Shown: positions 10,995-62,336 of the stretch, piece by piece
Layout: each line of letters starts with the position of its first letter
How positions within the stretch are numbered: the first letter of the stretch is position 1
Virus record (IMG/VR): IMGVR_UViG_3300021520_000002
Coordinates: 62,001-126,000 of that record
Length of the DNA stretch: 64,000 nucleotides
Direction: 5' to 3' (one strand)
Notes under the pieces: generated by a model
Database searches by the model: none
What the model was told of the DNA's origin: nothing
What the model saw: the letters and a program-made list of their open reading frames with translations, nothing else
Position numbers and translations under genes: made by a program

Positions 10995-11030
10995 ATATCG
11001 GCAAGATCTATTACTAAATCTTGCCGATAT
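10995..11030. repeat. intergenic palindrome copy 1 (ATCGGCAAGAT...ATCTTGCCGAT)
   Basis: ATATCGGCAAGATCTATTACTAAATCTTGCCGATAT. Confidence 0.95.
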
Positions 11031-11045
11031 TTAACGAGGTAAAAA

Positions 11046-12110
11046 ATGGATAATTTAATAGACTACATAAATCAAGCCTTCTTTACGGAAGATACTGGAG
11101 TTATGAACTATTTCTATCAGCAACAATATCAAAATTATGCTCCAGATATTAATGGATATACCTTATGTTTTATGGTACCACCAGATTTAAGTGGTTATCG
11201 AGTAAAATTTAATGCTGGTTCTGGACTTTATACACAAGGAGATTCCAATTCTTATGTTGGAGAAGTATCAAATATGATGTCTTTTCTAGCTGTGGATTTT
11301 ACACCCCCACAAAGTCAAGTTAATACAGAACAAATATCATCTAGAACTGGAGCTATTCCTTATGCAACTGAAGTTTCAGAATCTGAACAATGTTCTGTTA
11401 CTTTTATAGATACTAATCAATTAGATATTTATCATTTTCATCATATATGGTTAGAATATATAAGAGAAGTTTTGGAAGGTGTAGTTGATCCAGCACCAGA
11501 ATATTTAAATTCAAATTCACAAATACAAGTAGATTATAGTTCACCAATAAATGATATATATGGTGCTATTGATTATGCAGCTTCTCTTTATATTGTAAAG
11601 TATAGACCAGATATGAAAACTATTACATATGTTGCTAAATGTATGGGAATTTTTCCTCAAAGTTTACCTAATAAAGAATTAGTTGGAACAAGAACTTCAA
11701 ATGAATTAACAACATTACCTTTTAATTATTTTTGCACAGCTTATAGAGAAGCAACACATCTTGATTCTGGAAATGGTGCTTGGATACTTGGAGAACTAAA
11801 TAGTTTTATTTTTAAGAAATATGCAACATCTTCAAGATCAATTCTTGGATTATTAACTGGTATGGGATTACAATCTTTATTTGAGACAGATGTTGGTGCA
11901 AGATTACTAAAATCTGTTGGACAAATTGGATCGGATGTTGTAAAATATGCAGATGTAGCATCAACAATATATAAATCAACTGAAAAATTTGGACAAATTT
12001 TTGGAGTTGGACAAACATTTGGTGAGTCAGTGGGTGGTGTTCCAAATATAGTTAGTTTTCCATCATTTAGTTCTTCATCTGATGATCCTGGGATGGGATG
12101 GGGTACATAA
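11046..12110 (+). CDS. tail-tube-like protein (paralog of 44323..45132) with Gly/Ser-rich C-terminal extension
   Basis: PDINGY...DFTPP...GIFPQSLP parallels PYISGY...GFTPH...GVFPTNLP in the tube gene. Confidence 0.65.
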   Translation: MDNLIDYINQAFFTEDTGVMNYFYQQQYQNYAPDINGYTLCFMVPPDLSGYRVKFNAGSGLYTQGDSNSYVGEVSNMMSFLAVDFTPPQSQVNTEQISSRTGAIPYATEVSESEQCSVTFIDTNQLDIYHFHHIWLEYIREVLEGVVDPAPEYLNSNSQIQVDYSSPINDIYGAIDYAASLYIVKYRPDMKTITYVAKCMGIFPQSLPNKELVGTRTSNELTTLPFNYFCTAYREATHLDSGNGAWILGELNSFIFKKYATSSRSILGLLTGMGLQSLFETDVGARLLKSVGQIGSDVVKYADVASTIYKSTEKFGQIFGVGQTFGESVGGVPNIVSFPSFSSSSDDPGMGWGT

Positions 12111-12136
12111 AATTTTAGAATTAAAAGAGGTAGAAT

Positions 12137-15100
12137 ATGGCAGATTTACCAACGCTCAGTAATGCAACACCTGAAGATTTTATTGATTATTATTTTAATA
12201 ATTTAAAAACAGATCTAGGAGTTTTTGATATTGAAATAGCTAAAGTTGGATTTATTGGCTTTTTAATGAATCTCCTTGGAAATACACATTTTGATGTAAA
12301 AACATATTATGATGGATTATTTAAAGAAGCTTTTGTAGCGACGGCTCAAAGTGAAGAGAGTCAAAATTTACATGCTGCTATTTATGGATATACACCAGCT
12401 TTTGCAATACCAGCAACAGCAACAGGCTCAATTGAATTCGATTTTAATACAGCTCTTTCTACAAAAAATCCTAAGACAGTTAAACGAGAAGTATTTATTG
12501 GATATAGAACAACAGATCCAACAGGAACAACTGCAGAAAGAATTGGTGATATTACATTTAATTCTTCAGTTTATAAATTTACAATTGATGCTTTATATAA
12601 ATTTGTTCAAGAAATTACAAATCCTGGTACACCGTCAGAATCTAGTTCATATTATACAGAAGTAACAACAGTTGATGGAACAAAAATTATAATTCCATCA
12701 TCATCAGCTTATATAATTGTACCACTATATTCAACAACCCAATATAATTATAAAACTTATGAATTTCAAATTCCAAAATATAATCTTGGCTCATTTCAGA
12801 CATATTATTTTACAATTGATAGTGGTTATTATCTTTCTGCTGTTGAAGTTTATATTACTCCTACTGGTGGTGTTGAAGAAGAATATGAGGTTCAATTTGT
12901 TAAATATCTTGCTAGTGGAGATGATAAAACAGTATTTCTTAAAAAGATATCATCAACAAATTATATGCTTGAATTTGGTTCTGGTACTAGAGGAGTTTGG
13001 GTATCTCAATATAATGCTCGAGTAGTTATTAAATATTGTGAAGGAACTGCTGGTAATTTAATTGATTCATCATCAACAAAAATTGCTATTAATTGTGAAA
13101 CTTATAGTAAAGATTATGAAATAGATCCAATAACTGGGAATTTAATTCCTTTTAGTGGTCAAACAATAATAAAATCAAATTCAGTAGTTACAGATTTTGA
13201 ATCATCTAATGGTGGTACAAATTCTTTATCTGGTGATAATTTAAGAAATGAAATTGTAAATTTTATACAATCGAGGGATAATTTAGTTAGTGAAACTGAT
13301 TTTTATAATATTACTAGTGAAAATACTTTTTTAAAAGATTTTAAATTTTTATTTAAAAAGACTAATGTATATGATAATATTTTTCATCTATATAGGGCTT
13401 TTAGAGATAGAAATCAAGAAATATGTTATACAACTGATTATTTATTACCAATAGTAAATATTAATTTAAGTCCAGAAAATCTTATTTTAACATCTATTGT
13501 TGGTACTGGTTCATTAATACCAGGTCATACATATGCATATAGGGTTAGTGCTTATGATTCTTGGGGAGTATCTATTCCTTGTGATGAAGTTAGTATTATA
13601 TTAGCTGTTGGAAGTGATAGTGTAAGAATTACTTGGGACGCTATGAATAATGCTGTTGGTTATAGAATATATGGTAGAACTGTTAGTTCACAAGGAATGT
13701 ATTGGGATACAACTGATTTATTTATTGTTGATGATGGGAGTGCTGGTACTCCAGAAATTGTTCCAAGTGGTGCAACTTTAACTGATATGATTTATGATCC
13801 AGTTTTCTTTTTAGATGATTCATTTAGTTGTACACCAGATTCAGTAACTAATATTTTTTCAAGTGTAAATCATGGATTAGATGATGATGATGTTATATGT
13901 TTCTCTGGTACAGGTGGTGGAGTTACTGTTCAAACATATTATTATATTATTGATTCAATAGTAGATTCTTTTAAAATATCTCTTAGTAGAAGTGGAACAG
14001 CCGTAACATTAACAGATAATATAGTTAATGGTTTTTTCCGACCTTTTATTAGTCCTTTTTTTTATAAAGGAAATTCTAGATTAGGATATTTTGATGGATA
14101 TATTTTAGATCAAAATTTGTTGGTTCAATTTAGTGAAGTTATTTTAAGTACAAATACTATAGGTACTGGTTTTGATGTTCCTGTGATTTATCTTAATTTA
14201 AATTATAATATGATTACAGAGACAACAATATTACAAGTTAAATCATATCAGGATATTTCAGCATTACAGTTTGTTATTACTGTTTTTGGTTCTACAATAG
14301 CAAATCAGACTATGGTTTGGAATCCAGTAACAGATGCATTTGAATGGAATTATACTAATAGTTTAACATTTGGTATTATGGAAGAAGAATTACAAATTGA
14401 AGTTGTTGGATATGAATTTACAACTGTTTTTGTTGAAAGATTTAGAAGTAGAACAAGTAGTTTTTATCAAATATTAAATATAAGTGATCAATTAAGGTTA
14501 TTTAGATATGTTTATGGTACTAATATGTATATATTAAATCTTCCAGTAATATATTATGGAGGATTTATTAGTGATTCCGATTATTATTTAGATAAAATAT
14601 ATGAATTTATGATTAGTGCAAGTTTTCAAAATAATAGAATGATAACTGACAATGTTCAAGGTAGATTTTTAAATACTTATATTATTAAATCACCAGTGAT
14701 TGAAAATTGTTTAGTTCAGAAGGGAGAAGTATTTTCTGATTATAATTGGTTGGTTGGTATTTTAGAAACTTTAGATGAACCTTATTTAACAGTACCATTA
14801 GTTGGAGATAGATATCGAGTAAGTACTACTCCAGTTGGAGGAAGTGTATTTGATGGACATGCTAATGAAATAGCAATATATGCGGTTGGTGGTTGGACAT
14901 TTTATATTCCCATTGAAGATGATGGAGTTTTTGATGCAACATCAAGATTTGCTTATATTTGGGATAGTTCTGCTTGGGTTAGTATTCCTTCTATTAGATT
15001 GCCTTTAAAAATGATTGTGAATATTAAAGTGAATAAGGATTATACAGATAGAAATCCAACAGATCTTGGTCAAGTAAAAACTAATTTAATATTAACATTA

Positions 15101-15379
15101 GCTGATCATTTACAGACATGGAGAACAGGAGTTAATATTAAATTTTATAGTAGTCAAATAGTTGATATAATACACAATAATAGACCATGGGTTAAATCTG
15201 TTGTTGTTTTAGTTACAGATTCATCTCCTGTTCCAAATAGTCTTAATAATGGTATTGAAATTATAACTGAAGATTTAGTAGTTCTTGGTAATTTACCTGA
15301 TAAGCTTGAGATTTTAAAATATATACCACCCATGATTTATTGGGATATTAATAACATTGTTGTGAATTTAAGTATTTAA
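12137..15379 (+). CDS. baseplate wedge protein (T4 gp6-like) with inserted FN3-like and DUF2793-like modules
   Basis: EAFVATAQ...AAIYGY, LEFGSGTRG, GGTNSLSGDNLR, NLVSETDFY; YAYRVSAYDSWG and WDAMNNAVGYRIYGR; FDGHANEIAIY..GGWTFY. Confidence 0.75.
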   Translation: MADLPTLSNATPEDFIDYYFNNLKTDLGVFDIEIAKVGFIGFLMNLLGNTHFDVKTYYDGLFKEAFVATAQSEESQNLHAAIYGYTPAFAIPATATGSIEFDFNTALSTKNPKTVKREVFIGYRTTDPTGTTAERIGDITFNSSVYKFTIDALYKFVQEITNPGTPSESSSYYTEVTTVDGTKIIIPSSSAYIIVPLYSTTQYNYKTYEFQIPKYNLGSFQTYYFTIDSGYYLSAVEVYITPTGGVEEEYEVQFVKYLASGDDKTVFLKKISSTNYMLEFGSGTRGVWVSQYNARVVIKYCEGTAGNLIDSSSTKIAINCETYSKDYEIDPITGNLIPFSGQTIIKSNSVVTDFESSNGGTNSLSGDNLRNEIVNFIQSRDNLVSETDFYNITSENTFLKDFKFLFKKTNVYDNIFHLYRAFRDRNQEICYTTDYLLPIVNINLSPENLILTSIVGTGSLIPGHTYAYRVSAYDSWGVSIPCDEVSIILAVGSDSVRITWDAMNNAVGYRIYGRTVSSQGMYWDTTDLFIVDDGSAGTPEIVPSGATLTDMIYDPVFFLDDSFSCTPDSVTNIFSSVNHGLDDDDVICFSGTGGGVTVQTYYYIIDSIVDSFKISLSRSGTAVTLTDNIVNGFFRPFISPFFYKGNSRLGYFDGYILDQNLLVQFSEVILSTNTIGTGFDVPVIYLNLNYNMITETTILQVKSYQDISALQFVITVFGSTIANQTMVWNPVTDAFEWNYTNSLTFGIMEEELQIEVVGYEFTTVFVERFRSRTSSFYQILNISDQLRLFRYVYGTNMYILNLPVIYYGGFISDSDYYLDKIYEFMISASFQNNRMITDNVQGRFLNTYIIKSPVIENCLVQKGEVFSDYNWLVGILETLDEPYLTVPLVGDRYRVSTTPVGGSVFDGHANEIAIYAVGGWTFYIPIEDDGVFDATSRFAYIWDSSAWVSIPSIRLPLKMIVNIKVNKDYTDRNPTDLGQVKTNLILTLADHLQTWRTGVNIKFYSSQIVDIIHNNRPWVKSVVVLVTDSSPVPNSLNNGIEIITEDLVVLGNLPDKLEILKYIPPMIYWDINNIVVNLSI

Positions 15380-15389
15380 ATTTGTTTCA

Positions 15390-15421
15390 ATCGGCAAGAT
15401 CTGAAAAATGATCTTGCCGAT
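15390..15421. repeat. intergenic palindrome copy 2
   Basis: ATCGGCAAGATCTGAAAAATGATCTTGCCGAT. Confidence 0.95.
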
Positions 15422-15448
15422 GTTCCAAAATTGGAGGCGAAAAATTTT

Positions 15449-17305
15449 ATGATACGGGCACCATTTGTTTTAACTAAATATGATGAAGAGTCACTGAATC
15501 TTCTTCAAGAAAGTAATGGAATAAGTATCGATGAATTTAAACAAAATGAGTGGTTTAAATGTCGAGAGAATCCATTCTATTTTATTTTGAATTATGTTTA
15601 CCTACCAGAAGTTGGTGGGAAATTAAAATACACAAAAGAATATTTACACCCAAAATTTAGAAGAATAATAAAATCAATATATAAAAATCATATGGCAATG
15701 TTAATGGCTTCAAGACAGTTAGGAAAAAGCTCAATTGCCGCTTGTCTACTTGCTTGGGCATTAATCTTTTTTCCAAATAATAGAGTTGTTATTCTAAACT
15801 ATAGAAAAATTGCCGCTCAAGAAAACTTAAAGAAAATAAAGTTCATAATACAAAATTTACCAAGTTGGATGAGGATTCCTTATAGATCTAAAAGTGAAAT
15901 AAAGGAATATGCTGAATTACAAAATGGTTCAAGAATAGACACATTTTATCCTTCATCAACAAGTTCTCCTTCTACATTAGCTCGTTCATTAACAGTTCCA
16001 ATCTTATATGTTGATGAGGTAGCTTTTATTTCTCATATGGAAGAAATTTATGGTTCAGCACAGCAGACACTTTCTAATGCTAGAGAACAAGCTATTAAAA
16101 ATAGTTATCCCTACTTTATTTTTATGACATCAACTCCCAACGGTGTTGAAGGTGATGGAAAATTCTTTTATGATTTTTGGATGAATGCTGTTGAATCTGA
16201 TGATCTTTTTGCTGAAGATCCAGAAACTGGAATGGAAGATTGGATACCAAATACTGATGATGTTCTTAATCAACCAGATAAAAATAGTTTTACAAGAGTT
16301 AAATATCATTGGTCTGAAAATCCAGATAAAACTATAGCATGGTATGAACAACAAAAGAAAGAACTCAACTTTGATCTTAGAAAGATTAATCAGGAATTAG
16401 ATATACTTTTTGTTGGTGGGACAAATTGTATTTTTACCGATGAAGTTTTACAAAAGTTAACATTTTTTCCTAGAGCAAATTATCTTGAACTTTCAAATCA
16501 AGTTCAGTTCGATATGTATGAGGAAATTGATACTCAAGATTATTATTTATTAGGGGTAGATACAGCGAGTTCTATTAAAGGAGCTTTTAATGCTCTTGAA
16601 TTATTTTCATATAGAGATTTTAAACAAGTTGGTGAAGCTAATGTTAGATTGGGGTCATTGACTAAATATGGTGAAACTGTTGATTCATTATTTAGACAAA
16701 TATATAAAACAACACAAAGAATAATTCTTTGTATAGAAAATAATTCTATCGGCAAAGCAGTTATTGAACATCTAATTTATCATATTAAAGATTTTAATTA
16801 TATGCCTTTTATATATAAAGAAAAAGATCCTGATATGGTAGAAAAACATGAATTTGGAATTTCAACAACTGGGAAATCTAAAGAATTAATGGTTTCTCTT
16901 TTTTATGATCATATTAATCAAAATCCACAATGTTTAAAATCCCAAAATTTAATTGCACAATTAGGTACAATTCAAAGATCGAATCGTGGAACAATTAAAG
17001 CTTCGGGTTTTAGTGATATGTTTATGTCTGGAAGTTTTTGTGCATATGTTCGTAATAGAACATTTCTAGATATTTTGCCGTTATTAGGTCAATCAAATAA
17101 ACAAGTACAAGATACATTTTTTAACTCGGTAAAAACTGCTGCTGAAATGATGAATGTTAAATTAATTATTAAAAATTCTTTACAACAAGAAACTGGTTTT
17201 ATGTCTGTTCAAGAAGATTCTTATAGAGATGAAGATGCTAAACACGAAAGTGATACAATATTAGATGAAGATTGGAGAATATATATACCGATCATGACAC
17301 CATAG
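15449..17305 (+). CDS. terL: terminase large subunit (T4 gp17-like)
   Basis: Walker A SRQLGKS, Walker B LYVDEVAF, coupling motif TSTPNG, nuclease LGVDTA, IENNSIG; ATG 15449 after GGAGG (ORF track 15431). Confidence 0.93.
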   Translation: MIRAPFVLTKYDEESLNLLQESNGISIDEFKQNEWFKCRENPFYFILNYVYLPEVGGKLKYTKEYLHPKFRRIIKSIYKNHMAMLMASRQLGKSSIAACLLAWALIFFPNNRVVILNYRKIAAQENLKKIKFIIQNLPSWMRIPYRSKSEIKEYAELQNGSRIDTFYPSSTSSPSTLARSLTVPILYVDEVAFISHMEEIYGSAQQTLSNAREQAIKNSYPYFIFMTSTPNGVEGDGKFFYDFWMNAVESDDLFAEDPETGMEDWIPNTDDVLNQPDKNSFTRVKYHWSENPDKTIAWYEQQKKELNFDLRKINQELDILFVGGTNCIFTDEVLQKLTFFPRANYLELSNQVQFDMYEEIDTQDYYLLGVDTASSIKGAFNALELFSYRDFKQVGEANVRLGSLTKYGETVDSLFRQIYKTTQRIILCIENNSIGKAVIEHLIYHIKDFNYMPFIYKEKDPDMVEKHEFGISTTGKSKELMVSLFYDHINQNPQCLKSQNLIAQLGTIQRSNRGTIKASGFSDMFMSGSFCAYVRNRTFLDILPLLGQSNKQVQDTFFNSVKTAAEMMNVKLIIKNSLQQETGFMSVQEDSYRDEDAKHESDTILDEDWRIYIPIMTP

Positions 17306-17315
17306 GAGAGTTAGT

Positions 17316-54340: not shown

Positions 54341-54353
54341 TTCTCCTCCTTTC

Positions 54354-54617: not shown

Positions 54618-54635
54618 AGTTTCTCCTTTAAAAAC

Positions 54636-54741: not shown

Positions 54742-54753
54742 TTTATTATTTGT

Positions 54754-55388: not shown

Positions 55389-55649
55389 TTAAACCAACTC
55401 ATGTTGTTCTCCTTTATTGTAGTTTTTCATATATGGATCTATATTGTCCATAGCTTTTTGAATATTAAAACATATTTTACTTCCACAAATTGGACAATTT
55501 TTAGTTGCTCTTGTATCATAAATAATTTCACATTCAATACATAATACAGCATATCTTAATCCTATAGAACTAATTATTTGTGTATTATTTGATATAACTG
55601 AAATTTGTATGTCTTCTTTTTTAAAGAATTTATTTATGAAGTTGTTCAT
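55389..55649 (-). CDS. small zinc-ribbon protein
   Basis: CIEC...CPICGS. Confidence 0.65.
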   Translation of the reverse strand: MNNFINKFFKKEDIQISVISNNTQIISSIGLRYAVLCIECEIIYDTRATKNCPICGSKICFNIQKAMDNIDPYMKNYNKGEQHELV

Positions 55650-56398
55650 AATCTAAACTCTTGACCTTTCATGACAAATCCTTTAAATCCATCATGTTTA
55701 GCAGCAGGAAGAGGACCATCTTGATAATGACATAACCACATCTTTTTACGAATATTTTCAGGTAGTGTTAATAGTTCAGAATAATGTGCGTGAACTCCAC
55801 TTTTAAAAGGAGTTGTTTCACAGTCCTGAAAAATTAAATCTGCTGATGCATAAAAATCTTTAATCTGATTAGGATTAAACTGTGTATCTGTTGTTATGAA
55901 TATATTTTTAGTTTTAGTTCTTAATTTCAATCCAAAACATGGTCTAATACTAAATCCATCCATTATATGTACTACCTGGATAGGTGTTATTAAAATATTA
56001 TTCCAATGAACAGTTTCATTTTGACTAATAGCAATTACGTTAAAATAATCACTTAATTTCATTATCTTATTTTGAATACTTCCCAAACCACCAGATAATG
56101 TATTTTGCCATATTGATTCTTCTAAGGCTTTACTTATTAATAGATCAGGTTTAGTACAAGATGGATCAAAATATCGGCAAAAAGCTAAATATTCTAATCC
56201 ACCGGCATGATCTGCATGAAGATGTGAAATATACACTTCTGTTATATCTTTATATGACATTCCAGAATCTTTCAATGAAAATCTAATATCTGAACCTGCA
56301 TCAATTAAAAGTTTTTCTTTACCTTTAGTTAATAACATATTTGTTTGATAATTTGTCATTGAAAAAGCACTTCCACTTCCTAAGAATTTTAGTATCAT
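55646..56398 (-). CDS. MBL-fold metallohydrolase, Apyc1-like (cyclic nucleotide phosphodiesterase / RNase Z-like)
   Basis: FLGSGSAF, LIDAG, SHLHADHAGGLE, LSGGL, FQDCE, GVHAHY.ELLTLP, WLCHY. Confidence 0.8.
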   Translation of the reverse strand: MILKFLGSGSAFSMTNYQTNMLLTKGKEKLLIDAGSDIRFSLKDSGMSYKDITEVYISHLHADHAGGLEYLAFCRYFDPSCTKPDLLISKALEESIWQNTLSGGLGSIQNKIMKLSDYFNVIAISQNETVHWNNILITPIQVVHIMDGFSIRPCFGLKLRTKTKNIFITTDTQFNPNQIKDFYASADLIFQDCETTPFKSGVHAHYSELLTLPENIRKKMWLCHYQDGPLPAAKHDGFKGFVMKGQEFRL

Positions 56399-56424
56399 TT
56401 TTGTTTTTCCTTTTTAGATTTTTA

Positions 56425-56512
56425 TGGTGGCGCTGACTGGACTTGAACCAGCATGGAGAAAATCTCCGAGAGATTTTAAATCTCTTGTGTAAACCAATTC
56501 CACCACAGCGCC
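56425..56512 (-). tRNA. tRNA-Leu(TAA)
   Basis: GGCGCTG...AGAGA-TTTAAAA-TCTCT...GTTCAAGTC...CAGCGCC A CCA; long variable arm. Confidence 0.95.
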
Positions 56513-56519
56513 GATTATG

Positions 56520-56789
56520 TTAAGATTTACATTTATTTAATAGAATAATTGTTACTTTCAAAAAATCAACAAGATGATCAGCATCATATACACTTTCATA
56601 TTCAAAATCTTCTTCAGCTTCAAATATCGAAATATATTTACTATTGATAGTTTCTCTTTTTTCTTCTAATTTATCCATTTTTGAACTTTTTTGTTTATCT
56701 TCATTAAGCATTTCTAAATTTAAAACATATATTTTTTCTTCTAACATTGTTAATTCAATGATATCTTTTTTTATTTCATCTATTGTCAT
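56520..56789 (-). CDS. hypothetical protein between tRNAs
   Basis: ATG 56789 after AAGGA (ORF track 56855 overlaps tRNA-Ser). Confidence 0.55.
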   Translation of the reverse strand: MTIDEIKKDIIELTMLEEKIYVLNLEMLNEDKQKSSKMDKLEEKRETINSKYISIFEAEEDFEYESVYDADHLVDFLKVTIILLNKCKS

Positions 56790-56814
56790 TTTTATTTTCC
56801 TTTTTTGTATTATT

Positions 56815-56904
56815 TGGCGGAGAGCGTAGGATTTGAACCCACGAACCGCTTTCACGATTTCTAGTTTTCAAGACTAGCACCATCAGCCTCTCGGTCAGCT
56901 CTCC
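56815..56904 (-). tRNA. tRNA-Ser(TGA)
   Basis: GGAGAGC...CTAGT-CTTGAAA-ACTAG...GTTCAAATC...GCTCTCC G CCA; long variable arm. Confidence 0.95.
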
Positions 56905-56910
56905 ATTTAA

Positions 56911-57150
56911 TTATTTGCCGATTTTAATTTTCTCTATAATTTTACAATCCTCTAAATGACAAAAATCATCAATTCTACAATCATAGCAAACTGTTAGATT
57001 TGGACAACAATCTTCAACTATTCTAAAAACATCATTACCAAATCTACCATGTAGTTTATTTAAAATAAATGTGATCATTCTACTATTTTTAGCTGTAATA
57101 AGTTTACAATCATTACATTTCTCATCACATAAATATCTTCTATCTTTCAT
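56911..57150 (-). CDS. small Cys-rich protein
   Basis: CDEKCNDC...CCP...CYDCRIDDFCH. Confidence 0.6.
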   Translation of the reverse strand: MKDRRYLCDEKCNDCKLITAKNSRMITFILNKLHGRFGNDVFRIVEDCCPNLTVCYDCRIDDFCHLEDCKIIEKIKIGK

Positions 57151-57391
57151 TGTAATACTCTCTTTTTATATGAACAATTTTAACACACTCACATGGAACT
57201 TTTCTAACTCTCCCAGAAAGTCTTTTCTTAGGAACTGAACCTTCACCTTTACAAATTAAACAGTTTGGATCAGGATGTTTAGTTTCATATGGTTTGTATC
57301 TATCAATTGTAGAATCTATTACTTTATTAATATCGACCCCAACAAATGTTGCCATTGATGTTAATGTTAATAAACTTTTATCTTCCATCAT
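57140..57391 (-). CDS. small zinc-finger protein
   Basis: CLICKGEG...PCEC. Confidence 0.6.
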   Translation of the reverse strand: MMEDKSLLTLTSMATFVGVDINKVIDSTIDRYKPYETKHPDPNCLICKGEGSVPKKRLSGRVRKVPCECVKIVHIKREYYNER

Positions 57392-57588
57392 AACATTCCA
57401 GTTACATAAATTCTAACATATGGTATATCAATAGCATTAATACAATGAGTAACAGTAACTACTTTTCCAATTGCTCCACCACTAATAGATCTAATAAAAT
57501 CTCCAATTCTTGGAACAGCAACAAATGTTTTTGGCCAAAATAATGTTTTAAGATTATCTTCGTTTGATGTGACTTCACCTGCTATCAT
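57388..57588 (-). CDS. hypothetical protein
   Basis: AAGGAG RBS; VPRIGD motif. Confidence 0.6.
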   Translation of the reverse strand: MIAGEVTSNEDNLKTLFWPKTFVAVPRIGDFIRSISGGAIGKVVTVTHCINAIDIPYVRIYVTGML

Positions 57589-57597
57589 TTTCTCTCC

Positions 57598-57828
57598 TTA
57601 ACATACACAATGATCTGGAATTTCCATTAACCAAACTCTCCAATATTTTTCTTTTTCAGCAAAAGACATATCTTTAACATCTAAATCTTTTGGATGTCTA
57701 TAAAAATCATTACCTAATTGTGATAATTTTTCATCTTGTTTTAAATTCTTTTTTAAATGTTGTAAAGTACAATAGTTACATTTTGTTAGTTCACTCATTT
57801 CATTTTCCATTTTGCTACAAGTTCCCAA
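57598..57828 (-). CDS. small Cys-containing protein
   Basis: CNYC...HCVC; true start probably the later MSELT. Confidence 0.55.
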   Translation of the reverse strand: MGTCSKMENEMSELTKCNYCTLQHLKKNLKQDEKLSQLGNDFYRHPKDLDVKDMSFAEKEKYWRVWLMEIPDHCVC

Positions 57829-58073
57829 TTTCCAAATCTTTCATCAAAATATATAATCATATCAGAATCATTAATAGATGTAGATAACGTTTCAATTTCT
57901 GTTTTTAATATGTTAGATTCAAATTCTGCAGTTTGTGATATCATATTTTTTAAATGTCTAAACTTTTCTAATTTTGCATTTACTTGAATTTCAATTAATT
58001 CTTTTATAATTTCTTTTTTAAAAACTTCAAGTATACTTTTTATTTCTTTTTCTAAGTCCATTTTATATTCCAT
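57795..58073 (-). CDS. hypothetical protein
   Basis: Packed ORF. Confidence 0.5.
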   Translation of the reverse strand: MEYKMDLEKEIKSILEVFKKEIIKELIEIQVNAKLEKFRHLKNMISQTAEFESNILKTEIETLSTSINDSDMIIYFDERFGNWELVAKWKMK

Positions 58074-58461
58074 CCCAAGGTGAATAAAGATTTAGATTAC
58101 CTCTTTTTTTGATTGCCCAACGATGACTTCCTGGACCAATAAATTCTATAAATCCATTTTCAGTATCATTAACTCCAGATACTCCACCATGTCTAATATC
58201 AAAACCTTCAGAAAAATCTTTGCCTCGAACATTGAAAAATGCCGTTCCTGGTAATCCATTTTGATCATTTTCTGTTGGCTTTAAAGTAACATCTAAAATA
58301 TCTGTTATTATTATTTCATCAAAAATAATATCTCTCTCATTTGCTAATCGTTGATCAACAAGAGGACCACTATCATATACCTTTCCACCAATCCAATATA
58401 CACTGTTATCAACTATATCTGTAAGATCAGGAAAAAACTTTCCATCCACCATTAAGTACAT
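58063..58461 (-). CDS. hypothetical protein
   Basis: AAGGAGGT RBS. Confidence 0.65.
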   Translation of the reverse strand: MYLMVDGKFFPDLTDIVDNSVYWIGGKVYDSGPLVDQRLANERDIIFDEIIITDILDVTLKPTENDQNGLPGTAFFNVRGKDFSEGFDIRHGGVSGVNDTENGFIEFIGPGSHRWAIKKRGNLNLYSPWDGI

Positions 58462-58496
58462 ACTACCTCCTTTTGAAATTAAAATATATTTATATT

Positions 58497-58506
58497 ATTT
58501 CTATAT
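58497..58506 (-). promoter_or_regulatory. putative phage promoter motif ATATAGAAAT(AATA)
   Basis: Upstream of 58461. Confidence 0.55.
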
Positions 58507-58528
58507 GAATTAAGCTAAAATTAAAAAT

Positions 58529-58562
58529 TATCGGCAAGACCTATTTCTAGATCTTGCCGATA
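58529..58562. repeat. intergenic palindrome copy 7
   Basis: TATCGGCAAGACCTATTTCTAGATCTTGCCGATA. Confidence 0.95.
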
Positions 58563-58567
58563 TTAAT

Positions 58568-59215
58568 TTATTTCCAATTATCCTGAATCACCACTTTTCC
58601 ATCAATATGGGTGTGGCGTCCAATTTTATCTATGAGTTTATCATGTTCTAATATTATATCTATTAATCTATCATTAATTACAGAAATTTCTCCATCAATT
58701 CTTTTCATCCATGCTATTACAGCTTCAGAGAAAGATGAGACTTCCACTATTCCTTTAACTGTTTTCTCTTTAGGTTCTTCAATAATAGTTTTCTGTTTAG
58801 GTTCTTCAAAGATAGATTTTATCTTTTGTTGTCTTGTAATAAGTTCTCTTGGTGGAACTACAAATTTCAAATCCCAATCAAAAGTATACTTTTCTAAAGC
58901 AACCCAAGGATTTGTTATTTTAGGTAATTTTATAACTCTTTTATAAAATTCTTCCCAAGACACAGCACTTTTTACAATTGTTGCCAATTTAAAAAGTATA
59001 GTATCAGGAATCAATACAATATCGTTACCAGTTATTCCTAATTTTTTATTTCTAAGTTTTGAAGCATTAAATGTTTTGATAAGAGTAGTTGCTATTTTAT
59101 ATCTAAGAGTTTCGATATCATCACATTTATGTTTCATTGCCGATAAAATAAAATCTATTTGTTTTCCATTTAATTTTTTAAATTCTTCTATTATTTGACT
59201 GTATTGTTTACTCAT
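58568..59215 (-). CDS. hypothetical protein
   Basis: AAGGAG RBS; 215 aa. Confidence 0.65.
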   Translation of the reverse strand: MSKQYSQIIEEFKKLNGKQIDFILSAMKHKCDDIETLRYKIATTLIKTFNASKLRNKKLGITGNDIVLIPDTILFKLATIVKSAVSWEEFYKRVIKLPKITNPWVALEKYTFDWDLKFVVPPRELITRQQKIKSIFEEPKQKTIIEEPKEKTVKGIVEVSSFSEAVIAWMKRIDGEISVINDRLIDIILEHDKLIDKIGRHTHIDGKVVIQDNWK

Positions 59216-59216
59216 T

Positions 59217-59762
59217 TTACTCCTTTAGTAATTGAGTATATAAGTTCATTACATGTTTAGCTTGCTTATGAGCTACAGGATTGTTTCCACCTTTATATAA
59301 AGCAAGCGCCTTTTGTAAGTCTCCATTCGTTTCTTTTAGTTTTTGTTGCAGAATACGTACTCCATGTAAAGTATCTACATCGCTAAAAGAACTTGCTGTT
59401 GGTGTTTGTAGAATTCCTTTATATCTAACAGGAGTTCTATTTTTAGGTCCAACTGCTTGTTCGTCAAAATTTGATTCTGTTTTCATAAGAGCAGTAATTA
59501 ATTTATTATTAAGTCCTGTTTGTTTATGTGAAACTAGAATCGCCTTTACCAGTTCCGGTACTTTATTTTTTGGAGCATGAAGTCTATTTAAATCTTTTTC
59601 AATTTGTTCTGATAATAATTGATCTTTTGTTTTTAAAATTTCTATTTTTATTTCTTGCTTTTTTAGTACCGGCACTGGCAATGAATTGTTCAAACTATTA
59701 TATGTAACTACTACAAAGTATATACACATACATTGAATAAACAGTCTTGTCAGTAACTTCAT
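59217..59762 (-). CDS. lytic transglycosylase (SLT) with N-terminal signal/anchor
   Basis: ALMKTESNF, GILQ, ALALYKGG; hydrophobic N-terminus. Confidence 0.8.
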   Translation of the reverse strand: MKLLTRLFIQCMCIYFVVVTYNSLNNSLPVPVLKKQEIKIEILKTKDQLLSEQIEKDLNRLHAPKNKVPELVKAILVSHKQTGLNNKLITALMKTESNFDEQAVGPKNRTPVRYKGILQTPTASSFSDVDTLHGVRILQQKLKETNGDLQKALALYKGGNNPVAHKQAKHVMNLYTQLLKE

Positions 59763-59775
59763 TATATACTACCTC

Positions 59776-59928
59776 CTAAGTTTTTCTATTATCATTCTCT
59801 GAAATTTTTTGAGCTTTTTCTTGTGCTTTATTTGCAAATTCATTAACTTTATTTCTAAATTTATTACTATAAATGTATAGGCTTATCGCCCATCCAATAA
59901 TTAGTATTATCCAAAACCAATCCATCAT
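59776..59928 (-). CDS. 50-aa single-TM protein (paralog B), not in ORF track
   Basis: MMDWFWIILIIGWAISLYIYSNKFRNKVNEFANKAQEKAQKISENDNRKT*. Confidence 0.65.
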   Translation of the reverse strand: MMDWFWIILIIGWAISLYIYSNKFRNKVNEFANKAQEKAQKISENDNRKT

Positions 59929-60081
59929 TTATACCTTATCTTTATCTGAAATATCTTGAGCTGTACCTTTTATTTTATCTGCTCCAGCATCAACAACTTT
60001 TTTGAATGTTTTACTATAAATATATAAGGTTATCATCCAACCTATAAAACATATTATTGCTGCCCACACCCAAAAGTCCAT
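59929..60081 (-). CDS. 50-aa single-TM protein (paralog A), not in ORF track
   Basis: AAGGAGGT RBS; MDFWVWAAIICFIGWMITLYIYSKTFKKVVDAGADKIKGTAQDISDKDKV*. Confidence 0.7.
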   Translation of the reverse strand: MDFWVWAAIICFIGWMITLYIYSKTFKKVVDAGADKIKGTAQDISDKDKV

Positions 60082-60094
60082 ATTAACCTCCTTT

Positions 60095-60361
60095 TTAGTC
60101 GTTTCTTATATCAATGATTTTTGCTAAATAAATTGAATAAGAATTTTTTGGATCTTTTTCTTCAAATTTAAATAAATTATTTAAATATTTTGAAATTTTA
60201 TTTCTTTTCTTTAAAATAAGAGTATGAGTTGATGTGAAATCACTAAATTGTTCTTCTGTTATAATATTTTCAGTAACTAATTGTTTAAGAATAACTTCTT
60301 TAATATTATCACCAAAATTTTGTAGATCTTCAAATGAGTAATCAAAATGTTCTATTATCAT
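60095..60361 (-). CDS. hypothetical protein
   Basis: GAGGT RBS. Confidence 0.6.
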   Translation of the reverse strand: MIIEHFDYSFEDLQNFGDNIKEVILKQLVTENIITEEQFSDFTSTHTLILKKRNKISKYLNNLFKFEEKDPKNSYSIYLAKIIDIRND

Positions 60362-60385
60362 TTTACCTCTTTTTGTTAGATTGAG

Positions 60386-60457
60386 TTGCAGGGGTCAGAC
60401 TTGAACTGACGACTTGAAGCTTATGAGGCTTCCACGCTACCTCTGCGTCACCCTGCA
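60386..60457 (-). tRNA. tRNA with CAT anticodon (elongator Met or Ile2), CCA not encoded
   Basis: TGCAGGG...GAAGC-CTCATAA-GCTTC...GTCAG-TTCAAGT-CTGAC-CCCTGCA-A. Confidence 0.88.
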
Positions 60458-60470
60458 AATCTTTTAAGAA

Positions 60471-60542
60471 GGAGGAATTGGCTCAACTTTCCCTAAATTA
60501 TTGTCGACAATTAAATGTCATCGGATGTTTGGCCATTCCTCC
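60471..60542 (-). ncRNA. candidate small structured RNA upstream of the CAT tRNA
   Basis: Closing helix GGAGGAAT(T)GGC/GCCA(A)TTCCTCC with an inner ATTGTCGACAAT palindrome. Confidence 0.35.
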
Positions 60543-60546
60543 CAGT

Positions 60547-60771
60547 TTATTCTTTTTTTGTTTCTTCATTAAACCGCTTAAGAGTTTCAACGGCTCCTTC
60601 TAATTCTTTGCCGCATTTTTCACAAACTATTAAAGGTTCAGGACAAGGATCATCTTCAGGATTATAATCATATACTCCTTTTTTAACTACCTTTCCTTCT
60701 AGAGTGGCAAAAACTTTATCACCCTTCTTTAATGGCTGTTGACAAATGTAGCAGTTCTTAGCTGCTGCCAT
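60547..60771 (-). CDS. small zinc-finger protein
   Basis: CYIC...CEKC; AGGAGG RBS. Confidence 0.65.
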   Translation of the reverse strand: MAAAKNCYICQQPLKKGDKVFATLEGKVVKKGVYDYNPEDDPCPEPLIVCEKCGKELEGAVETLKRFNEETKKE

Positions 60772-60787
60772 AATTTAACCTCCTATT

Positions 60788-61288
60788 TTATAAATAACAG
60801 AAGATAACTTCTTCTGGAGTTATCTTTTCTAAAATTTTTAAAACAACATCTTTATCTAATCCTCCATTACTCACTCCTGGTATCGGCAAATAAACTTCTT
60901 TAAGATTATTATCTTTTATTAAATAACTTAATTGAATCATACTTCTTTGAATAAGTCCTAAATCAGCTTTACACCAGAAACCTGGAACATTTTCATCTGT
61001 TGGTTTAAATCTTGGTTTAATATGATCTAGTGTTTGTTCATAATTTCCATATGATGGTTTAACTGGAAAAACTATAATTCTTTCATATATAAATCCAACA
61101 ATATTTCCATATTTTTCTAAATGTTGTCCTAAATTTTTTGGAAGATCTAAAATTAATTTTGCCATAGCAAGAGCATTACCTCTACCAAGAACACCCTCTT
61201 TTGATTTTTTTATATATCCATTTGTAGTGATACACACAATTTTACCTTGTTTCCAAAGTTCTACTATATTAGCTTTTATTATTTTCAT
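60788..61288 (-). CDS. macrodomain-like (ADP-ribose-binding/hydrolase) protein
   Basis: ITTNGY...GVLGRGNA, FPVK, ADLGLIQRS, LPIPGVSNGGL; ATG 61288 (ORF track 61333). Confidence 0.7.
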   Translation of the reverse strand: MKIIKANIVELWKQGKIVCITTNGYIKKSKEGVLGRGNALAMAKLILDLPKNLGQHLEKYGNIVGFIYERIIVFPVKPSYGNYEQTLDHIKPRFKPTDENVPGFWCKADLGLIQRSMIQLSYLIKDNNLKEVYLPIPGVSNGGLDKDVVLKILEKITPEEVIFCYL

Positions 61289-61491: not shown

Positions 61492-61501
61492 ATTTCTATA
61501 T
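61492..61501 (-). promoter_or_regulatory. putative phage promoter motif ATATAGAAAT(AATAAA)
   Basis: Upstream of 61457. Confidence 0.55.
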
Positions 61502-61580
61502 ATAAATAGATAATATTAAATTTGAGTTTAAGAATAAAAATTAGGGCGTCTTTGATGACGCCACTTGTTTTTTGTTGATA

Positions 61581-62288
61581 TTATTTTACTCGATTATCAA
61601 ATGTTCTCATTATTCTTATATTAATTTTATTTTCAGTTAACATATTACATATTGCATCTCTGAGATTTTCAAATTTTTCTTTAGTTGGTTCTGGTAAATT
61701 AACTTGTTTGTATCTTGAATTTACTCCAAGCCAAACATATTCTGGATTAATTTTTTTAATCATTTTTAAAAATTCATCATGATCAAAATCCATAACTGGT
61801 TCTATTGTTAGAATTTTATGAGGCCAATTTAATTTTAGAAATTGTCTATATCTAACTATTGGCGCTGGTGCTTTTGAAATTTTTTCATAACCATCATTTC
61901 TATTGGTTTCTAATGTTGTTATTAATTTCACATTATCTGGTAATATATCTAGAAATTGTTCAAAATATTTTGGTCTCTTACTTTGCATGAAGAATATTTT
62001 ATTTTTATGCTTTATATTACTCATACTTTTAATTATTTTGATAGTAAATTCTGGATCACAAAATGATATATCTCCGTTACCACATACAAATATTGTTTTA
62101 GCACTAGGTATTTTATCTAGCCTATCTGGATGTGTATGTGGAATAAAGTTATAACAATCAATACATCTCTTTTTCTGTCGTTTAGCTTGTGCTTGAAAAC
62201 TGGGTTTACAGTATTCACAATCAAACTCGCAACCTTTAAATGGGTTCCATGTCTTCACATTTGTATACATATTTGATTTTGTTGTCAT
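61581..62288 (-). CDS. DUF5131 (phage Gp37/Gp68) radical-SAM-like protein
   Basis: TWNPFKGCEFDCEYC, IFVCGNGD, QSKRP, TTLETN, TIEP. Confidence 0.75.
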   Translation of the reverse strand: MTTKSNMYTNVKTWNPFKGCEFDCEYCKPSFQAQAKRQKKRCIDCYNFIPHTHPDRLDKIPSAKTIFVCGNGDISFCDPEFTIKIIKSMSNIKHKNKIFFMQSKRPKYFEQFLDILPDNVKLITTLETNRNDGYEKISKAPAPIVRYRQFLKLNWPHKILTIEPVMDFDHDEFLKMIKKINPEYVWLGVNSRYKQVNLPEPTKEKFENLRDAICNMLTENKINIRIMRTFDNRVK

Positions 62289-62301
62289 TTATTTTTCCTT
62301 T

Positions 62302-62336
62302 AATCGGCAAGATTCTATTTCTAGATCTTGCCGATT
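62302..62336. repeat. intergenic palindrome copy 8
   Basis: AATCGGCAAGATTCTATTTCTAGATCTTGCCGATT; core is the exact reverse complement of copy 3. Confidence 0.95.

What the first reader, a model, noticed from the sequence alone, without database searches (positions are those of the whole stretch)
10995..62336. Family of conserved intergenic palindromes ATCGGCAAGATC-loop-GATCTTGCCGAT
Eight full copies (10995, 15390, 22254, 29273, 35373, 44260, 58529, 62302) lie between co-directional genes, most within ~20 nt of a stop. Arms are nearly invariant while loops vary, and they lack the consistent U-tract of this genome's real terminators. Copies 3 and 8 are identical over 33 nt when read on the transcribed strand (GAAA loop, bulged A). 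The substitutions in copies 4 and 7 both give G.U pairs on the transcribed strand, favouring a folded single-stranded form; copy 1 has a C.A mismatch instead. They flank key genes (both tube paralogs, terminase, capsid). Candidate roles are RNA processing/stabilising signals, dimeric protein operators, or REP/attC-like recombination sites. A degenerate copy may lie near 46777-46806.
Basis: partly seen in the sequence, partly recalled or inferred. Interest (0 to 1): 0.8.

Follow-up and report, generated by a model that had tools for sequence, protein, structure and literature searches.

The report
Conserved stem-loop family between phage genes
A large freshwater T4-like phage and its close relatives put one nearly identical 32-34-base hairpin just after the stop codons of many genes; the one copy with RNA data marks an mRNA 3' end, the copies also act as joints where genes are inserted or swapped, and the hairpin arms contain the most over-used 8-letter word of the whole genome.

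Summary
There are eight full palindromes (arm hits 20 against 0.1 expected), and a covariance model finds exactly these eight. The window belongs to a 285-kb T4-like phage contig. At least six related low-GC phage contigs carry the same family, often at orthologous gene junctions.

Pairing of the arms is maintained by compensatory changes, so a folded hairpin matters. A rigid dimer operator is unlikely. Family-wide there is no G.U strand bias and no consistent U-tract.

More distant relatives have unrelated hairpins at the same junctions. In four metatranscriptome runs (two samples) the abundant capsid-gene contig ends at copy 5 and depth drops about 3-fold.

Best reading: inter-cistronic RNA stem-loops that set or protect mRNA 3' ends, homogenised and spread like the PeSL cassettes of T4-type phages. 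One copy was gained at a junction that lacks it in relatives. In this genome that copy is split by a 299-nt gene insertion.

New and unexplained: outside the palindromes, ATCGGCAA is the most over-represented 8-mer of the window. It is built inside genes from rare codons, in both orientations. This points to an additional DNA-level signal.

The parts
10997..11028 (+). Palindrome copy 1. It lies 7 nt after the stop of ORF 9751-10989 and 17 nt before the ATG of a tail-tube-like gene. It has a C.A mismatch on the sense strand.
15390..15421 (+). Palindrome copy 2. It lies 10 nt after the stop of the 1080-aa tail protein gene, upstream of the large terminase gene. Orthologous copies exist in G2 (L006:1962) and G4 (L024:5528, stem extended to about 18 bp).
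22255..22287 (+). Palindrome copy 3. It lies 7 nt after the stop of the 1643-aa SLT-domain protein gene. It has a GAAA loop and a bulged A, and is identical to copy 8 on the sense strand.
29275..29306 (+). Palindrome copy 4. It lies 48 nt after the stop of the DnaB-like helicase gene (exon 2). It has a U.G pair on the sense strand. Orthologous copies exist in G2 and G5.
35373..35406 (+). Palindrome copy 5. It lies 15 nt after the major capsid gene stop and has a T-rich tail. The abundant metatranscriptome contig ends here in four runs.
36772..36779 (+). Left-arm remnant (ATCGGCAA) of a split palindrome.
36780..37078 (+). A 299-nt insertion inside the split palindrome, made of a 5' leader with a Shine-Dalgarno sequence plus small gene Y (ATG 36803). 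Its first 29 nt repeat 35410-35438. A homologue of Y in G2 sits directly after the capsid-gene hairpin.
37079..37090 (+). Intact right arm of the split palindrome. G2 has the whole palindrome at exactly this junction (L105:7093-7124). G4, G5 and L019 have neither a hairpin nor gene Y there.
44262..44295 (+). Palindrome copy 6. It lies 8 nt after the tail sheath gene stop. The orthologous site carries compensatory variants in G4 (GACC/GGTC) and G5 (G:C at pair 5).
58530..58561 (-). Palindrome copy 7. It lies 6 nt after the stop of ORF 58568-59215. It is followed by a T-rich stretch and the conserved promoter-like box (58494-58505), giving a PeSL-like cassette.
62303..62335 (-). Palindrome copy 8. 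It lies 6 nt after the stop of ORF 62342-63115 and 14 nt before the next ATG.
4670..4681 (+). Lone right arm (GATCTTGCCGAT), lying between a Shine-Dalgarno sequence and the ATG at 4680.
1181..60889 (.). Sixteen lone ATCGGCAA words outside the full and split palindromes, at 1181, 3666, 4674, 8160, 8661, 16748, 32767, 38291, 40124, 40248, 50041, 50130, 56173, 56915, 59137 and 60882. The one at 4674 lies inside the lone arm listed above. The others lie inside called ORFs, in both orientations, and use rare codons. The related word AGCGGCA is also enriched (19 copies).
37636..37675 (.). Non-family bidirectional hairpin between convergent genes. G5 has a family member at the same site (L017:13607).

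Best explanation
The palindromes are transcribed as part of long operon mRNAs and fold into stable 12-18-bp stem-loops right after the stop codon of the upstream gene. There they set or protect the 3' end of the upstream mRNA segment, acting as a leaky terminator and/or a block to 3'-to-5' exonucleases. The upstream gene (for example the capsid gene) is therefore represented several-fold more than its downstream neighbours. This job is generic, because more distant relatives use unrelated hairpins at the same junctions.

In this clade the hairpins have become one sequence family for two reasons. First, they are copied and converted between sites by recombination, like the PeSL terminator/promoter cassettes of T4-type phages. 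This creates new copies, flips loops, and makes the hairpins the joints at which small genes are inserted or exchanged. Second, their arms are inverted pairs of an 8-nt word, ATCGGCAA, that this lineage also enriches inside its genes. This implies a second, DNA-level use of the word, possibly as a recognition site for a DNA-binding, nicking or recombination function, in the way uptake or Chi-type words are paired in terminators.

Shown: the existence of the family, its position, the maintained pairing, an mRNA 3' end at one copy, the gain and the splitting of one copy, and the word enrichment. Inferred: that all copies act on RNA, how they are copied, and what reads the word.
For: (1) Position. 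Eight of eight window copies, and the copies in relatives, are intergenic. Seven of the eight start 6-15 nt after a stop codon.
(2) Same sites, other hairpins. Relatives with 31-53% capsid identity carry unrelated GC-rich hairpins directly after the capsid stop; L019 also has them after the helicase and tube-paralog genes. At the convergent junction G5 has a family copy, while G1, G2 and G4 have non-family hairpins.
(3) RNA. In four metatranscriptome runs (two samples) a contig of depth about 10-12 covering the head genes ends at 35342-35397, within or just before copy 5. Downstream contigs have depth 2-7. The antisense-gene stretch 37600-38179 has zero depth, so the signal is RNA and not DNA. 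Word share is 0.60 for 33000-42999 against 0.14 for 9500-16499.
(4) Pairing. 90.6% of cells are paired against 84.4% in shuffles (0 of 500 shuffles reach it). The covariation score is 0.198 against 0.085. Three pair types occur at column 11-32 with no unpaired case. There is a complete U:A to C:G switch with U.G intermediates. The outer flanks co-vary.
(5) Copying. Non-orthologous copies share loops, and loops occur in both orientations. The junction between ORF 36548-36769 and ORF 37109-37639 has no hairpin in G4, G5 and L019, an intact family hairpin in G2, and a copy split by a 299-nt gene insertion in the window. Hairpin plus promoter-box cassettes are repeated.
(6) Word. ATCGGCAA occurs 34 times against 0.49 expected. 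After masking the palindromes it is the top 8-mer of 16,582 tested. It is made from rare codons such as ATC-GGC and CCG. Related enriched words occur in G2 and G4-G6 but not in three outgroup loci.
Against: RNA data exist for one copy only, and that copy is the one with the most terminator-like T-rich tail. They come from assembled contigs without strand or end resolution, and three of the four runs are from one sample. Most copies lack a U-tract, so classical intrinsic termination is doubtful. Termination and post-transcriptional trimming cannot be told apart. There is no sense-strand bias of wobble pairs (10 against 8), so pairing could be maintained at the DNA level (cruciform, or hairpin-templated correction) rather than in RNA. 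Eight stem pairs are invariant in 41 copies from at least seven contigs. No outer-stem variants were found in IMG/VR. This invariance is stronger than a purely structural role predicts and hints at a sequence-specific reader that was not identified.
Confidence: 0.55

Rival explanations
1. The primary function is at the DNA level. ATCGGCAA is a genome-wide recognition word for a phage or host DNA machine: Chi-like protection or recombination, site-specific nicking, or a binding site. The palindromes are simply paired words placed where coding constraints are absent, as with uptake sequences in Neisseria terminators. Any RNA effect is secondary.
For: Lone words are 30-fold or more over-represented inside genes, in both orientations and in several reading frames, using rare codons. 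One G1 site arose by two synonymous changes relative to G2 (ATC GGC AAA against ATT GGT AAA). Related words are enriched only in genomes that carry the palindromes. The core CGGC and AGA are invariant in all copies.
Against: Lone sites share only the outer 8 nt; the inner GATC(T) part and the complementarity are specific to the palindromes. Within single genomes, variant copies (G:C, C:G, A:U at pair 5) stay complementary, which a degenerate word would not require. Unrelated hairpins occupy the same sites in relatives. No reader protein and no host genome carrying the word were found. The orientation bias is weak (12:4 in the window, about 17:8 overall).
Confidence: 0.2
2. The palindromes are selfish, miniature mobile palindromic elements (REP/MITE-like) that spread through a hairpin-specific nuclease or transposase encoded elsewhere in the 285-kb genome. 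Their position after stop codons only reflects where insertions are tolerated.
For: A copy was gained at a junction that ancestrally had 5-8 nt between genes. The same variant occurs in either orientation relative to transcription (copy 1 against L012 copies). Decayed and half copies exist. Two homing-type endonuclease genes lie in the window.
Against: No Y1/HUH transposase or integrase appears in the Pfam survey of 86 window ORFs, which lists the top 25 of 30 matched families; only 64 of 285 kb was examined. There are no target-site duplications or conserved target. Copies persist at orthologous sites across genomes whose capsid proteins are only about 70% identical, with arms intact. This indicates purifying selection rather than neutral parasitism.
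Confidence: 0.1
3. The hairpins are sequence-specific RNA signals read by a dedicated protein, such as a Cas6-like or RNase III-type processing nuclease or a stem-loop binding protein as for histone mRNAs. This protein cuts or stabilises polycistronic mRNAs at each junction.
For: The stem sequence is invariant while the loop is free. There is a 3' end at copy 5. Copies lie 2-30 nt upstream of ribosome-binding sites.
Against: There is no strand bias of wobble pairs. The same variant is used in both orientations relative to transcription. Lone words occur in both orientations inside genes. Unrelated hairpins substitute at the same sites. No candidate RNA-binding or RNase domain was found in the window.
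Confidence: 0.1
4. The palindromes are double-stranded operators for a dimeric transcription regulator, or hairpin promoters of the N4 type.
For: The half-sites are perfectly symmetric and are placed just upstream of ribosome-binding sites.
Against: Inter-arm spacing varies from 7 to 20 nt and the stems extend through co-varying flanks. Only 14-29 nt separate the palindrome from the ATG at most copies, leaving no room for a promoter. RNA depth falls rather than rises downstream of copy 5.
Confidence: 0.04

Closest known systems
PeSL (promoter-early stem-loop) cassettes of T4-type phages (Arbiol et al. 2010, PMC2839356; Comeau et al. 2014, PMC4122927)
   Same: The phage superfamily is the same (Gp23-type capsid, T4-type portal, prohead protease). 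Both are repeated intergenic stem-loops at the 3' end of the upstream gene followed by a Shine-Dalgarno sequence and a start codon. Both are associated with insertion, replacement and displacement of small ORFs. Degraded or half elements occur near indels. Copy 7, and copies in L012 and L003, are followed by a conserved promoter-like box.
   Different: PeSL stems are short and loosely conserved and are defined together with a sigma-70-like promoter. They are described as less frequent in structural regions. Here the stem is 12-18 bp with a core that is invariant across genomes. Six of the eight window copies sit in late, replication or structural operons with no room for a promoter. The arms also contain a word that is enriched genome-wide.
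DNA uptake sequences (DUS/USS) paired as terminators in Neisseria and Haemophilus, and Chi-type over-represented octamers (established knowledge, not tested here)
   Same: A short word is strongly over-represented, including inside genes. Inverted pairs of the word form hairpins just downstream of genes. The density is about one per few kb.
   Different: These are bacterial chromosomes with known readers (ComP, RecBCD/AddAB). Here the genome is a phage, no reader is known, and orientation bias is weak. The palindromes carry an extra conserved inner part (GATC) that is absent from lone sites.
REP/BIME elements of enterobacteria
   Same: Both are extragenic repeated palindromes after stop codons in operons that stabilise upstream mRNA against 3' exonucleases. 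Both occur in both orientations.
   Different: REPs are imperfect, carry a conserved GTAG, and are linked to RAYT transposases. None of these features was found here.
Rho-independent terminators
   Same: A GC-containing stem-loop sits after a gene. Copy 5 and most G6 copies have a T-run, and a transcript end is seen at copy 5.
   Different: There is no consistent U-tract. The hairpin is so close to the stop codon that terminating ribosomes should mask it. One sequence is shared by all sites.

Membership tests
Rho-independent terminator | Stable GC-containing stem-loop | tested here: met
   Folding energies are -18.6 to -24.6 kcal/mol, with z-scores of -5.9 to -9.4.
Rho-independent terminator | U-tract directly 3' of the stem on the sense strand | tested here: not met
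   The mean is 4.5 T in the 10 nt after the stem against 4.8 A in the 10 nt before it (n=38, p=0.45). Only copy 5 and the G6 copies are T-rich.
Rho-independent terminator | Transcripts end at the element | tested here: inconclusive
   Contig ends and a roughly 3-fold depth drop are seen at copy 5 in four runs. Contigs give no exact ends.
PeSL (T4-type phages) | Phage of the T4 superfamily | tested here: met
   Capsid relatives carry PF07068 Gp23. Neighbouring genes are Portal_T4 and Peptidase_S77. The terminase matches Terminase_6N of T4 type.
PeSL (T4-type phages) | Stem-loop immediately followed by a sigma-70-like early promoter, then a Shine-Dalgarno sequence and a start codon | tested here: not met
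   At seven of the eight copies only 14-29 nt separate the stem from the ATG, leaving no room for a promoter. Only copy 7 (and L012 and L003 copies) has a conserved promoter-like box.
PeSL (T4-type phages) | Association with indels and ORF exchange between close relatives | tested here: met
   There is a split copy with inserted gene Y. The Y homologue in G2 lies after the capsid hairpin. The hairpin is gained in G1/G2 relative to G4, G5 and L019. The cassette position differs between G1 and G2 next to a variable region.
REP/RAYT | Y1 (RAYT) transposase gene and a conserved GTAG at the foot of the REP | tested here: not met
   No Y1_Tnp appears in the Pfam survey of 86 window ORFs, which lists the top 25 of 30 matched families. 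There is no GTAG in the arms. Only 64 of 285 kb was examined.
Integron attC | Imperfect R''-L''/L'-R' structure with extrahelical bases, an IntI integrase and a cassette array | tested here: not met
   The arms are mostly perfect. No integrase appears among the families listed for the window. The genes between copies are conserved core phage genes.
Chi/DUS-like genome-wide word | Word strongly over-represented, also within coding sequence | tested here: met
   34 occurrences against 0.49 expected. It is the top 8-mer after masking the palindromes. It is built from rare codons.
Chi/DUS-like genome-wide word | Cognate recognition machinery, or the same word enriched in the host genome | not testable with these tools
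   The host was not identified. The genome scan was truncated and gave only phage-like low-GC contigs.
Chi/DUS-like genome-wide word | Strand orientation bias (Chi) | tested here: inconclusive
   The split is 12:4 in the window and about 17:8 when other loci of the same genome are included.
Dimeric dsDNA operator | Fixed half-site spacing | tested here: not met
   Inter-arm distance is 7-10 nt in most copies and 20 nt in L024:5528.
Known RNA families (Rfam) | Match to a curated covariance model | tested here: not met
   At gathering threshold only three tRNAs matched in the window.

The most novel reading that the evidence does not exclude
ATCGGCAA (with its relative AGCGGCA) is a genome-wide signal that this phage lineage writes into its own genes by codon choice. 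It is read by an unidentified DNA-processing function, either a phage nickase or recombination factor, or a host Chi-type reader. The inter-genic palindromes are paired copies of that signal. They serve both as mRNA 3'-end hairpins and as the preferred break-and-join points for gene cassette exchange. In effect this would be a phage-borne equivalent of uptake or Chi words paired in terminators.
Probability: 0.3. Interest if true: 0.8.

Novelty: new variant of a known kind. Interest (0 to 1): 0.6.

Why it matters
Repeated regulatory stem-loops are thought to drive modular gene shuffling in T4-type phages, but the known examples are short and loosely conserved. This family is long and nearly invariant across diverged genomes. 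It sits inside core structural operons, has direct RNA support for one copy, and provides a clean empty / filled / split series of one site. That makes the recombination-joint idea directly testable. The extreme enrichment of the arm word inside genes, achieved with rare codons, would be an unusual example of a phage maintaining a genome-wide sequence signal. It could also lead to a new DNA-binding or nicking factor. The hairpin is a practical marker for recognising members of this uncultured freshwater jumbo-phage clade.

Tried and rejected
- No similar record exists in the GenBank phage collection, by DNA or by capsid protein.
- Rfam gave no family for the hairpins.
- The T4 late promoter word TATAAATA is not enriched (21 against 19.8).
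- The sigma-70 scan was at background level.
- The G.U strand-bias test showed no bias.
- The U-tract test showed no enrichment.
- Full-text search for the arm sequence returned only unrelated primers.
- Host inference from the heptose-pathway fusion protein failed; the nearest cellular homologues are about 42% identical Acidobacteriota.
- A scan that allowed outer-stem variants found none within the family.
- The relationship of contigs G3, G6 and G7 to the window phage could not be established from the pieces held.
- A maximal-order Markov expectation was uninformative for the word.
- A k-mer ranking over all G1 loci was swamped by repetitive coding sequence in L011-L013, so it was redone on the window alone.
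- The first attempt to fetch the G2 junction with the 176-aa protein missed G2. The neighbouring 298-aa protein worked.

Full report
**1. The observation.** The arm ATCGGCAAGATC, allowing one mismatch, occurs 20 times in the window against 0.10 expected from shuffles.
- Sixteen hits form eight inverted pairs: 10997-11028, 15390-15421, 22255-22287, 29275-29306, 35373-35406, 44262-44295, 58530-58561 and 62303-62335.
- A covariance model built from 41 family members and run without filters recovers exactly these eight (40-55 bits); the next hit scores 10 bits.
- Each folds into a 12-16-bp stem with an energy of -18.6 to -24.6 kcal/mol and a z-score of -5.9 to -9.4.
- All eight are intergenic between co-directional genes. 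Seven begin 6-15 nt after the upstream stop and one begins 48 nt after it. The next ATG lies 14-29 nt downstream, or 68 nt for copy 7.
- The suggested degenerate copy at 46774-46809 is at noise level for the model (8.4 bits, E 8.5). It does share the inner loop motif.

**2. Where the window comes from.** The window is identical to part of IMGVR_UViG_3300021520_000002, a 285.6-kb viral contig with 28-29% GC.
- Metatranscriptome runs that hold the sequence are labelled freshwater.
- There is no similar record in the GenBank phage collection.
- The gene content is that of a distant T4-type myovirus: large terminase, sheath and tube-like proteins, a capsid whose relatives carry the Gp23 domain, a T4-type portal, an S77 prohead protease and a DnaB-like helicase.
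- Genes use strong Shine-Dalgarno sequences. The host was not identified.

**3. The family in other genomes.** Pattern scans and locus fetches recovered the same palindrome in at least six further low-GC viral contigs (labelled G2-G7) and in three phage-like contigs binned into MAGs.
- G2 shares about 77-87% nucleotide identity with the window in the aligned segments. G4 and G5 have capsids about 71-72% identical. The relationship of G3, G6 and G7 is unresolved.
- Copies sit at orthologous junctions: before the terminase gene; after the 1643-aa protein gene; after the helicase gene; after the capsid gene; and after the sheath gene.
- Loops differ freely, while the stem core is constant.

**4. 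Pairing is maintained.** I made a sense-oriented alignment of 41 copies and counted base pairs on it.
- 90.6% of cells are standard pairs against 84.4% in shuffles (0 of 500 shuffles reach this). The covariation score is 0.198 against 0.085. All slid registers collapse to 31-42% paired.
- Pair 11-32 is A:U in 29 copies, G:C in 7 and C:G in 5, and is never unpaired. Single genomes hold two or three of these types.
- Pair 15-28 shows U:A, U.G (window copies 4 and 7) and a complete C:G switch (L071:2932, at the site orthologous to copy 6).
- The two positions outside the core co-vary (AT/AT, AC/GT, AG/CT, GG/CC), and some stems extend to 17-18 bp.
- A low-GC scan that left pair 11-32 free returned only complementary combinations, whereas chance hits in high-GC contigs were mixed.
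- So a folded hairpin, or a process that symmetrises the arms, is real.
- Eight pairs (CGGC and AGA, with their partners) never vary in the 41 copies. A scan that freed the outer stem found no family variants.

**5.
- Across the family there are 10 sense-strand G.U pairs against 8 A.C pairs, which would be G.U on the other strand.
- Seven imperfect copies fold better on the sense strand and three on the antisense strand.
- The same variant (right arm AATC with a similar loop) is found in both orientations relative to transcription. Loop types occur flipped, for example tatttcta/tagaaata and tatattacaa/ttgtaatata.
- T-runs after the stem are not enriched overall: 4.5 of 10 T downstream against 4.8 of 10 A upstream. 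Only the G6 copies and window copy 5 look like classical terminators.

**6. What the sites do.**
- In relatives with only 31-53% capsid identity, an unrelated GC-rich hairpin follows the capsid stop codon. This is seen in L019, L090, L091, L094, L096, L097 and L098. In L019 other unrelated hairpins follow the helicase and tube-paralog genes.
- At the convergent junction after ORF 37109-37639, G5 has a family copy. The window, G2 and G4 have different hairpins there.
- The need for a hairpin at these junctions is therefore old and sequence-independent.
- RNA evidence comes from four metatranscriptome runs (three from one sample). A contig of word depth about 10-12 covers the head genes and ends at 35374, 35342, 35397 and 35370, which is at copy 5 (35373-35406).
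- Downstream contigs are short with depths of 2-7. The stretch 37600-38179, which lies in the oppositely oriented gene, has zero depth, so the signal is RNA and not contaminating DNA.
- The head and tail region is also far better represented than 9500-16499: word share 0.60 against 0.14.
- This fits a transcript 3' end or a stabilising barrier with partial read-through, and argues against a promoter.
- Two caveats apply. Copy 5 is the copy with the most terminator-like tail. Contigs give neither strand nor exact ends.
- The closeness of the stems to stop codons (6-15 nt) makes efficient co-translational termination unlikely on general grounds. A post-transcriptional 3'-exonuclease block is therefore at least as plausible. 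This last point is inference.

**7. The family is dynamic and marks recombination joints.**
- The junction between ORF 36548-36769 and ORF 37109-37639 has only 5-8 nt and no hairpin in G4, G5 and the outgroup L019.
- G2 has an intact family palindrome followed by a new Shine-Dalgarno sequence at that junction (L105:7093-7124). The BLAST boundaries fall exactly at its arms.
- In the window the same palindrome is split. The left remnant ATCGGCAA is at 36772-36779. A 299-nt insert follows, carrying a leader, a Shine-Dalgarno sequence and small gene Y. The intact right arm is at 37079-37090.
- The first 29 nt of the insert repeat the sequence that follows copy 5 (35410-35438 = 36783-36811).
- In G2 a homologue of Y lies directly after the capsid hairpin, where the window has a different small gene.
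- Further signs of turnover are a lone right arm between a Shine-Dalgarno sequence and the ATG at 4670-4681 and a copy with one arm decayed by three transitions (L012:3800-3831).
- Copy 7, two L012 copies and L003:7476 are each followed by a T-rich stretch and a conserved box (core TATAGAAATAAT), and then a Shine-Dalgarno sequence.
- The same box follows unrelated hairpins at 46852, 3280 and 61360. Its four exact copies all lie upstream of genes in the correct orientation.
- This stem-loop-plus-promoter architecture, and the link with ORF exchange, is what Arbiol et al. (PMC2839356) and Comeau et al. (PMC4122927) described as PeSLs in T4-type phages.
- Seven of the eight window copies leave no room for a promoter and six sit in core late or replication operons. 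They are therefore PeSL-like rather than PeSLs.

**8. An unexpected second layer.**
- The outer 8 nt of the arm, ATCGGCAA, occurs 34 times in the window against 0.49 expected.
- Sixteen occurrences lie outside the full and split palindromes. Fifteen of these are inside called ORFs. They occur in both orientations: 9 have TTGCCGAT and 7 have ATCGGCAA on the coding strand. They occupy three reading frames.
- They are spelled with codons that are rare in this genome. ATC is 6% of Ile codons, GGC is 3% of Gly, CCG is 6% of Pro and GCC is 5% of Ala. For example, ATC-GGC-AAA for Ile-Gly-Lys occurs five times.
- After masking every palindrome, ATCGGCAA is the most over-represented of 16,582 8-mers: 18 against 0.44 with an order-2 model and against 2.5 with an order-3 model. 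ATCGGCAAA is the top 9-mer (14 against 0.85). The related word AGCGGCA is also enriched, 19 against 0.53.
- G2 shows TAGCGGCA (12 against 0.1). G4, G5 and G6 show CGGCAAGA. Three outgroup loci without the palindrome family show nothing comparable.
- Lone sites are only partly conserved between G1 and G2. One G1 site differs from G2 by two synonymous changes that create the word.
- A tight palindrome made of two such words lies at L011:5676-5694.
- Orientation bias is weak.
- This pattern means that the word itself is favoured at the DNA level, independently of the hairpins. The closest analogies, from established knowledge, are uptake sequences paired in terminators and Chi-type octamers.
- I could not identify a reader. 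The window encodes an HNH-AP2 endonuclease (46866-47498) and a His-Me endonuclease within an intron (27349-28152). Nothing links either to the word.

**9. Verdict.**
- The finding is real and is more than a set of plain terminators. Its core function is most likely the ordinary one of inter-cistronic mRNA 3'-end hairpins.
- What is unusual is threefold: the degree of sequence fixation across diverged genomes; the documented gain and splitting of a copy by a gene insertion; and the fact that the arms carry the genome's most over-used word.
- I rate it a new variant of a known kind (PeSL-like stem-loop modules). There is a 0.3 chance that a genuinely new genome-wide DNA signal lies behind it.
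- The main weaknesses are these: RNA support for one copy only; no strand-resolved ends; only 64 of 285 kb of the genome examined for candidate factors; an unidentified host; and no way to tell selection for pairing in RNA from hairpin-templated correction in DNA.

Noticed in passing
window 27028-28239: A group I intron (Rfam RF00028, 53.5 bits, E 1.8e-12, with a 3' piece at 28147-28199) carries a His-Me finger endonuclease ORF (27349-28152). It splits the DnaB-like helicase gene into ORFs 26191-27081 and 28240-29226 (296 + 328 aa). Relatives have a single gene of 608-640 aa.
   Followed up: yes
L006:2582-3577 (G2 terminase gene): The G2 large terminase gene has an insertion of about 1 kb relative to the window at window position about 16004-16008. 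Part of it (L006:2614-2775) resembles the 5' part of the window's helicase intron (27097-27259). It is probably a related mobile intron in another gene.
   Followed up: partly
window 45562-45581 and 46852-46871: Two identical UUCG-loop hairpins with T-runs on both sides bracket a segment that has no counterpart in G2. An HNH_3 + AP2 homing-type endonuclease gene (46866-47498, minus strand) lies directly beside the second hairpin.
   Followed up: partly
window 25912, 46814, 58494, 61489 (exact); 3321, 38513 (1 mismatch): A conserved promoter-like box with core TATAGAAATAAT lies upstream of genes on both strands, usually preceded by a hairpin and a T-rich stretch. The T4 late-promoter word TATAAATA is not enriched.
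   Followed up: partly
window 49877-53569 (minus strand): A cluster of sugar-nucleotide genes resembles a heptose pathway: a HAD/PNK3P phosphatase, a PfkB kinase and a cytidylyltransferase-SIS fusion. The nearest cellular homologues are about 42% identical (Acidobacteriota).
   Followed up: partly
window 55646-56398 (minus strand): An ORF matches the anti-Pycsar Apyc1 family (E 3e-28), a metallo-beta-lactamase-fold cyclic-nucleotide phosphodiesterase that acts as a counter-defence.
   Followed up: no
window 56425-56512, 56815-56904, 60385-60457 (minus strand): Three tRNA genes are present (Leu-TAA, Ser-TGA, Met-CAT). A lone ATCGGCAA word abuts the tRNA-Ser end (56915). Another lies 742 nt away in the inverse orientation (56173).
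   Followed up: no
L011-L013 (other parts of the same 285-kb contig): These loci contain very repetitive coding sequence (for example ACAAGTGG 93 times against 5 expected). This suggests giant repeat-rich structural proteins (ORFs of 1440 and more than 1950 aa).
   Followed up: no
window 29239-29265: An 8-codon mini-ORF with its own Shine-Dalgarno sequence lies between the helicase stop and palindrome copy 4. This explains the unusually long 48-nt gap at this copy.
   Followed up: no
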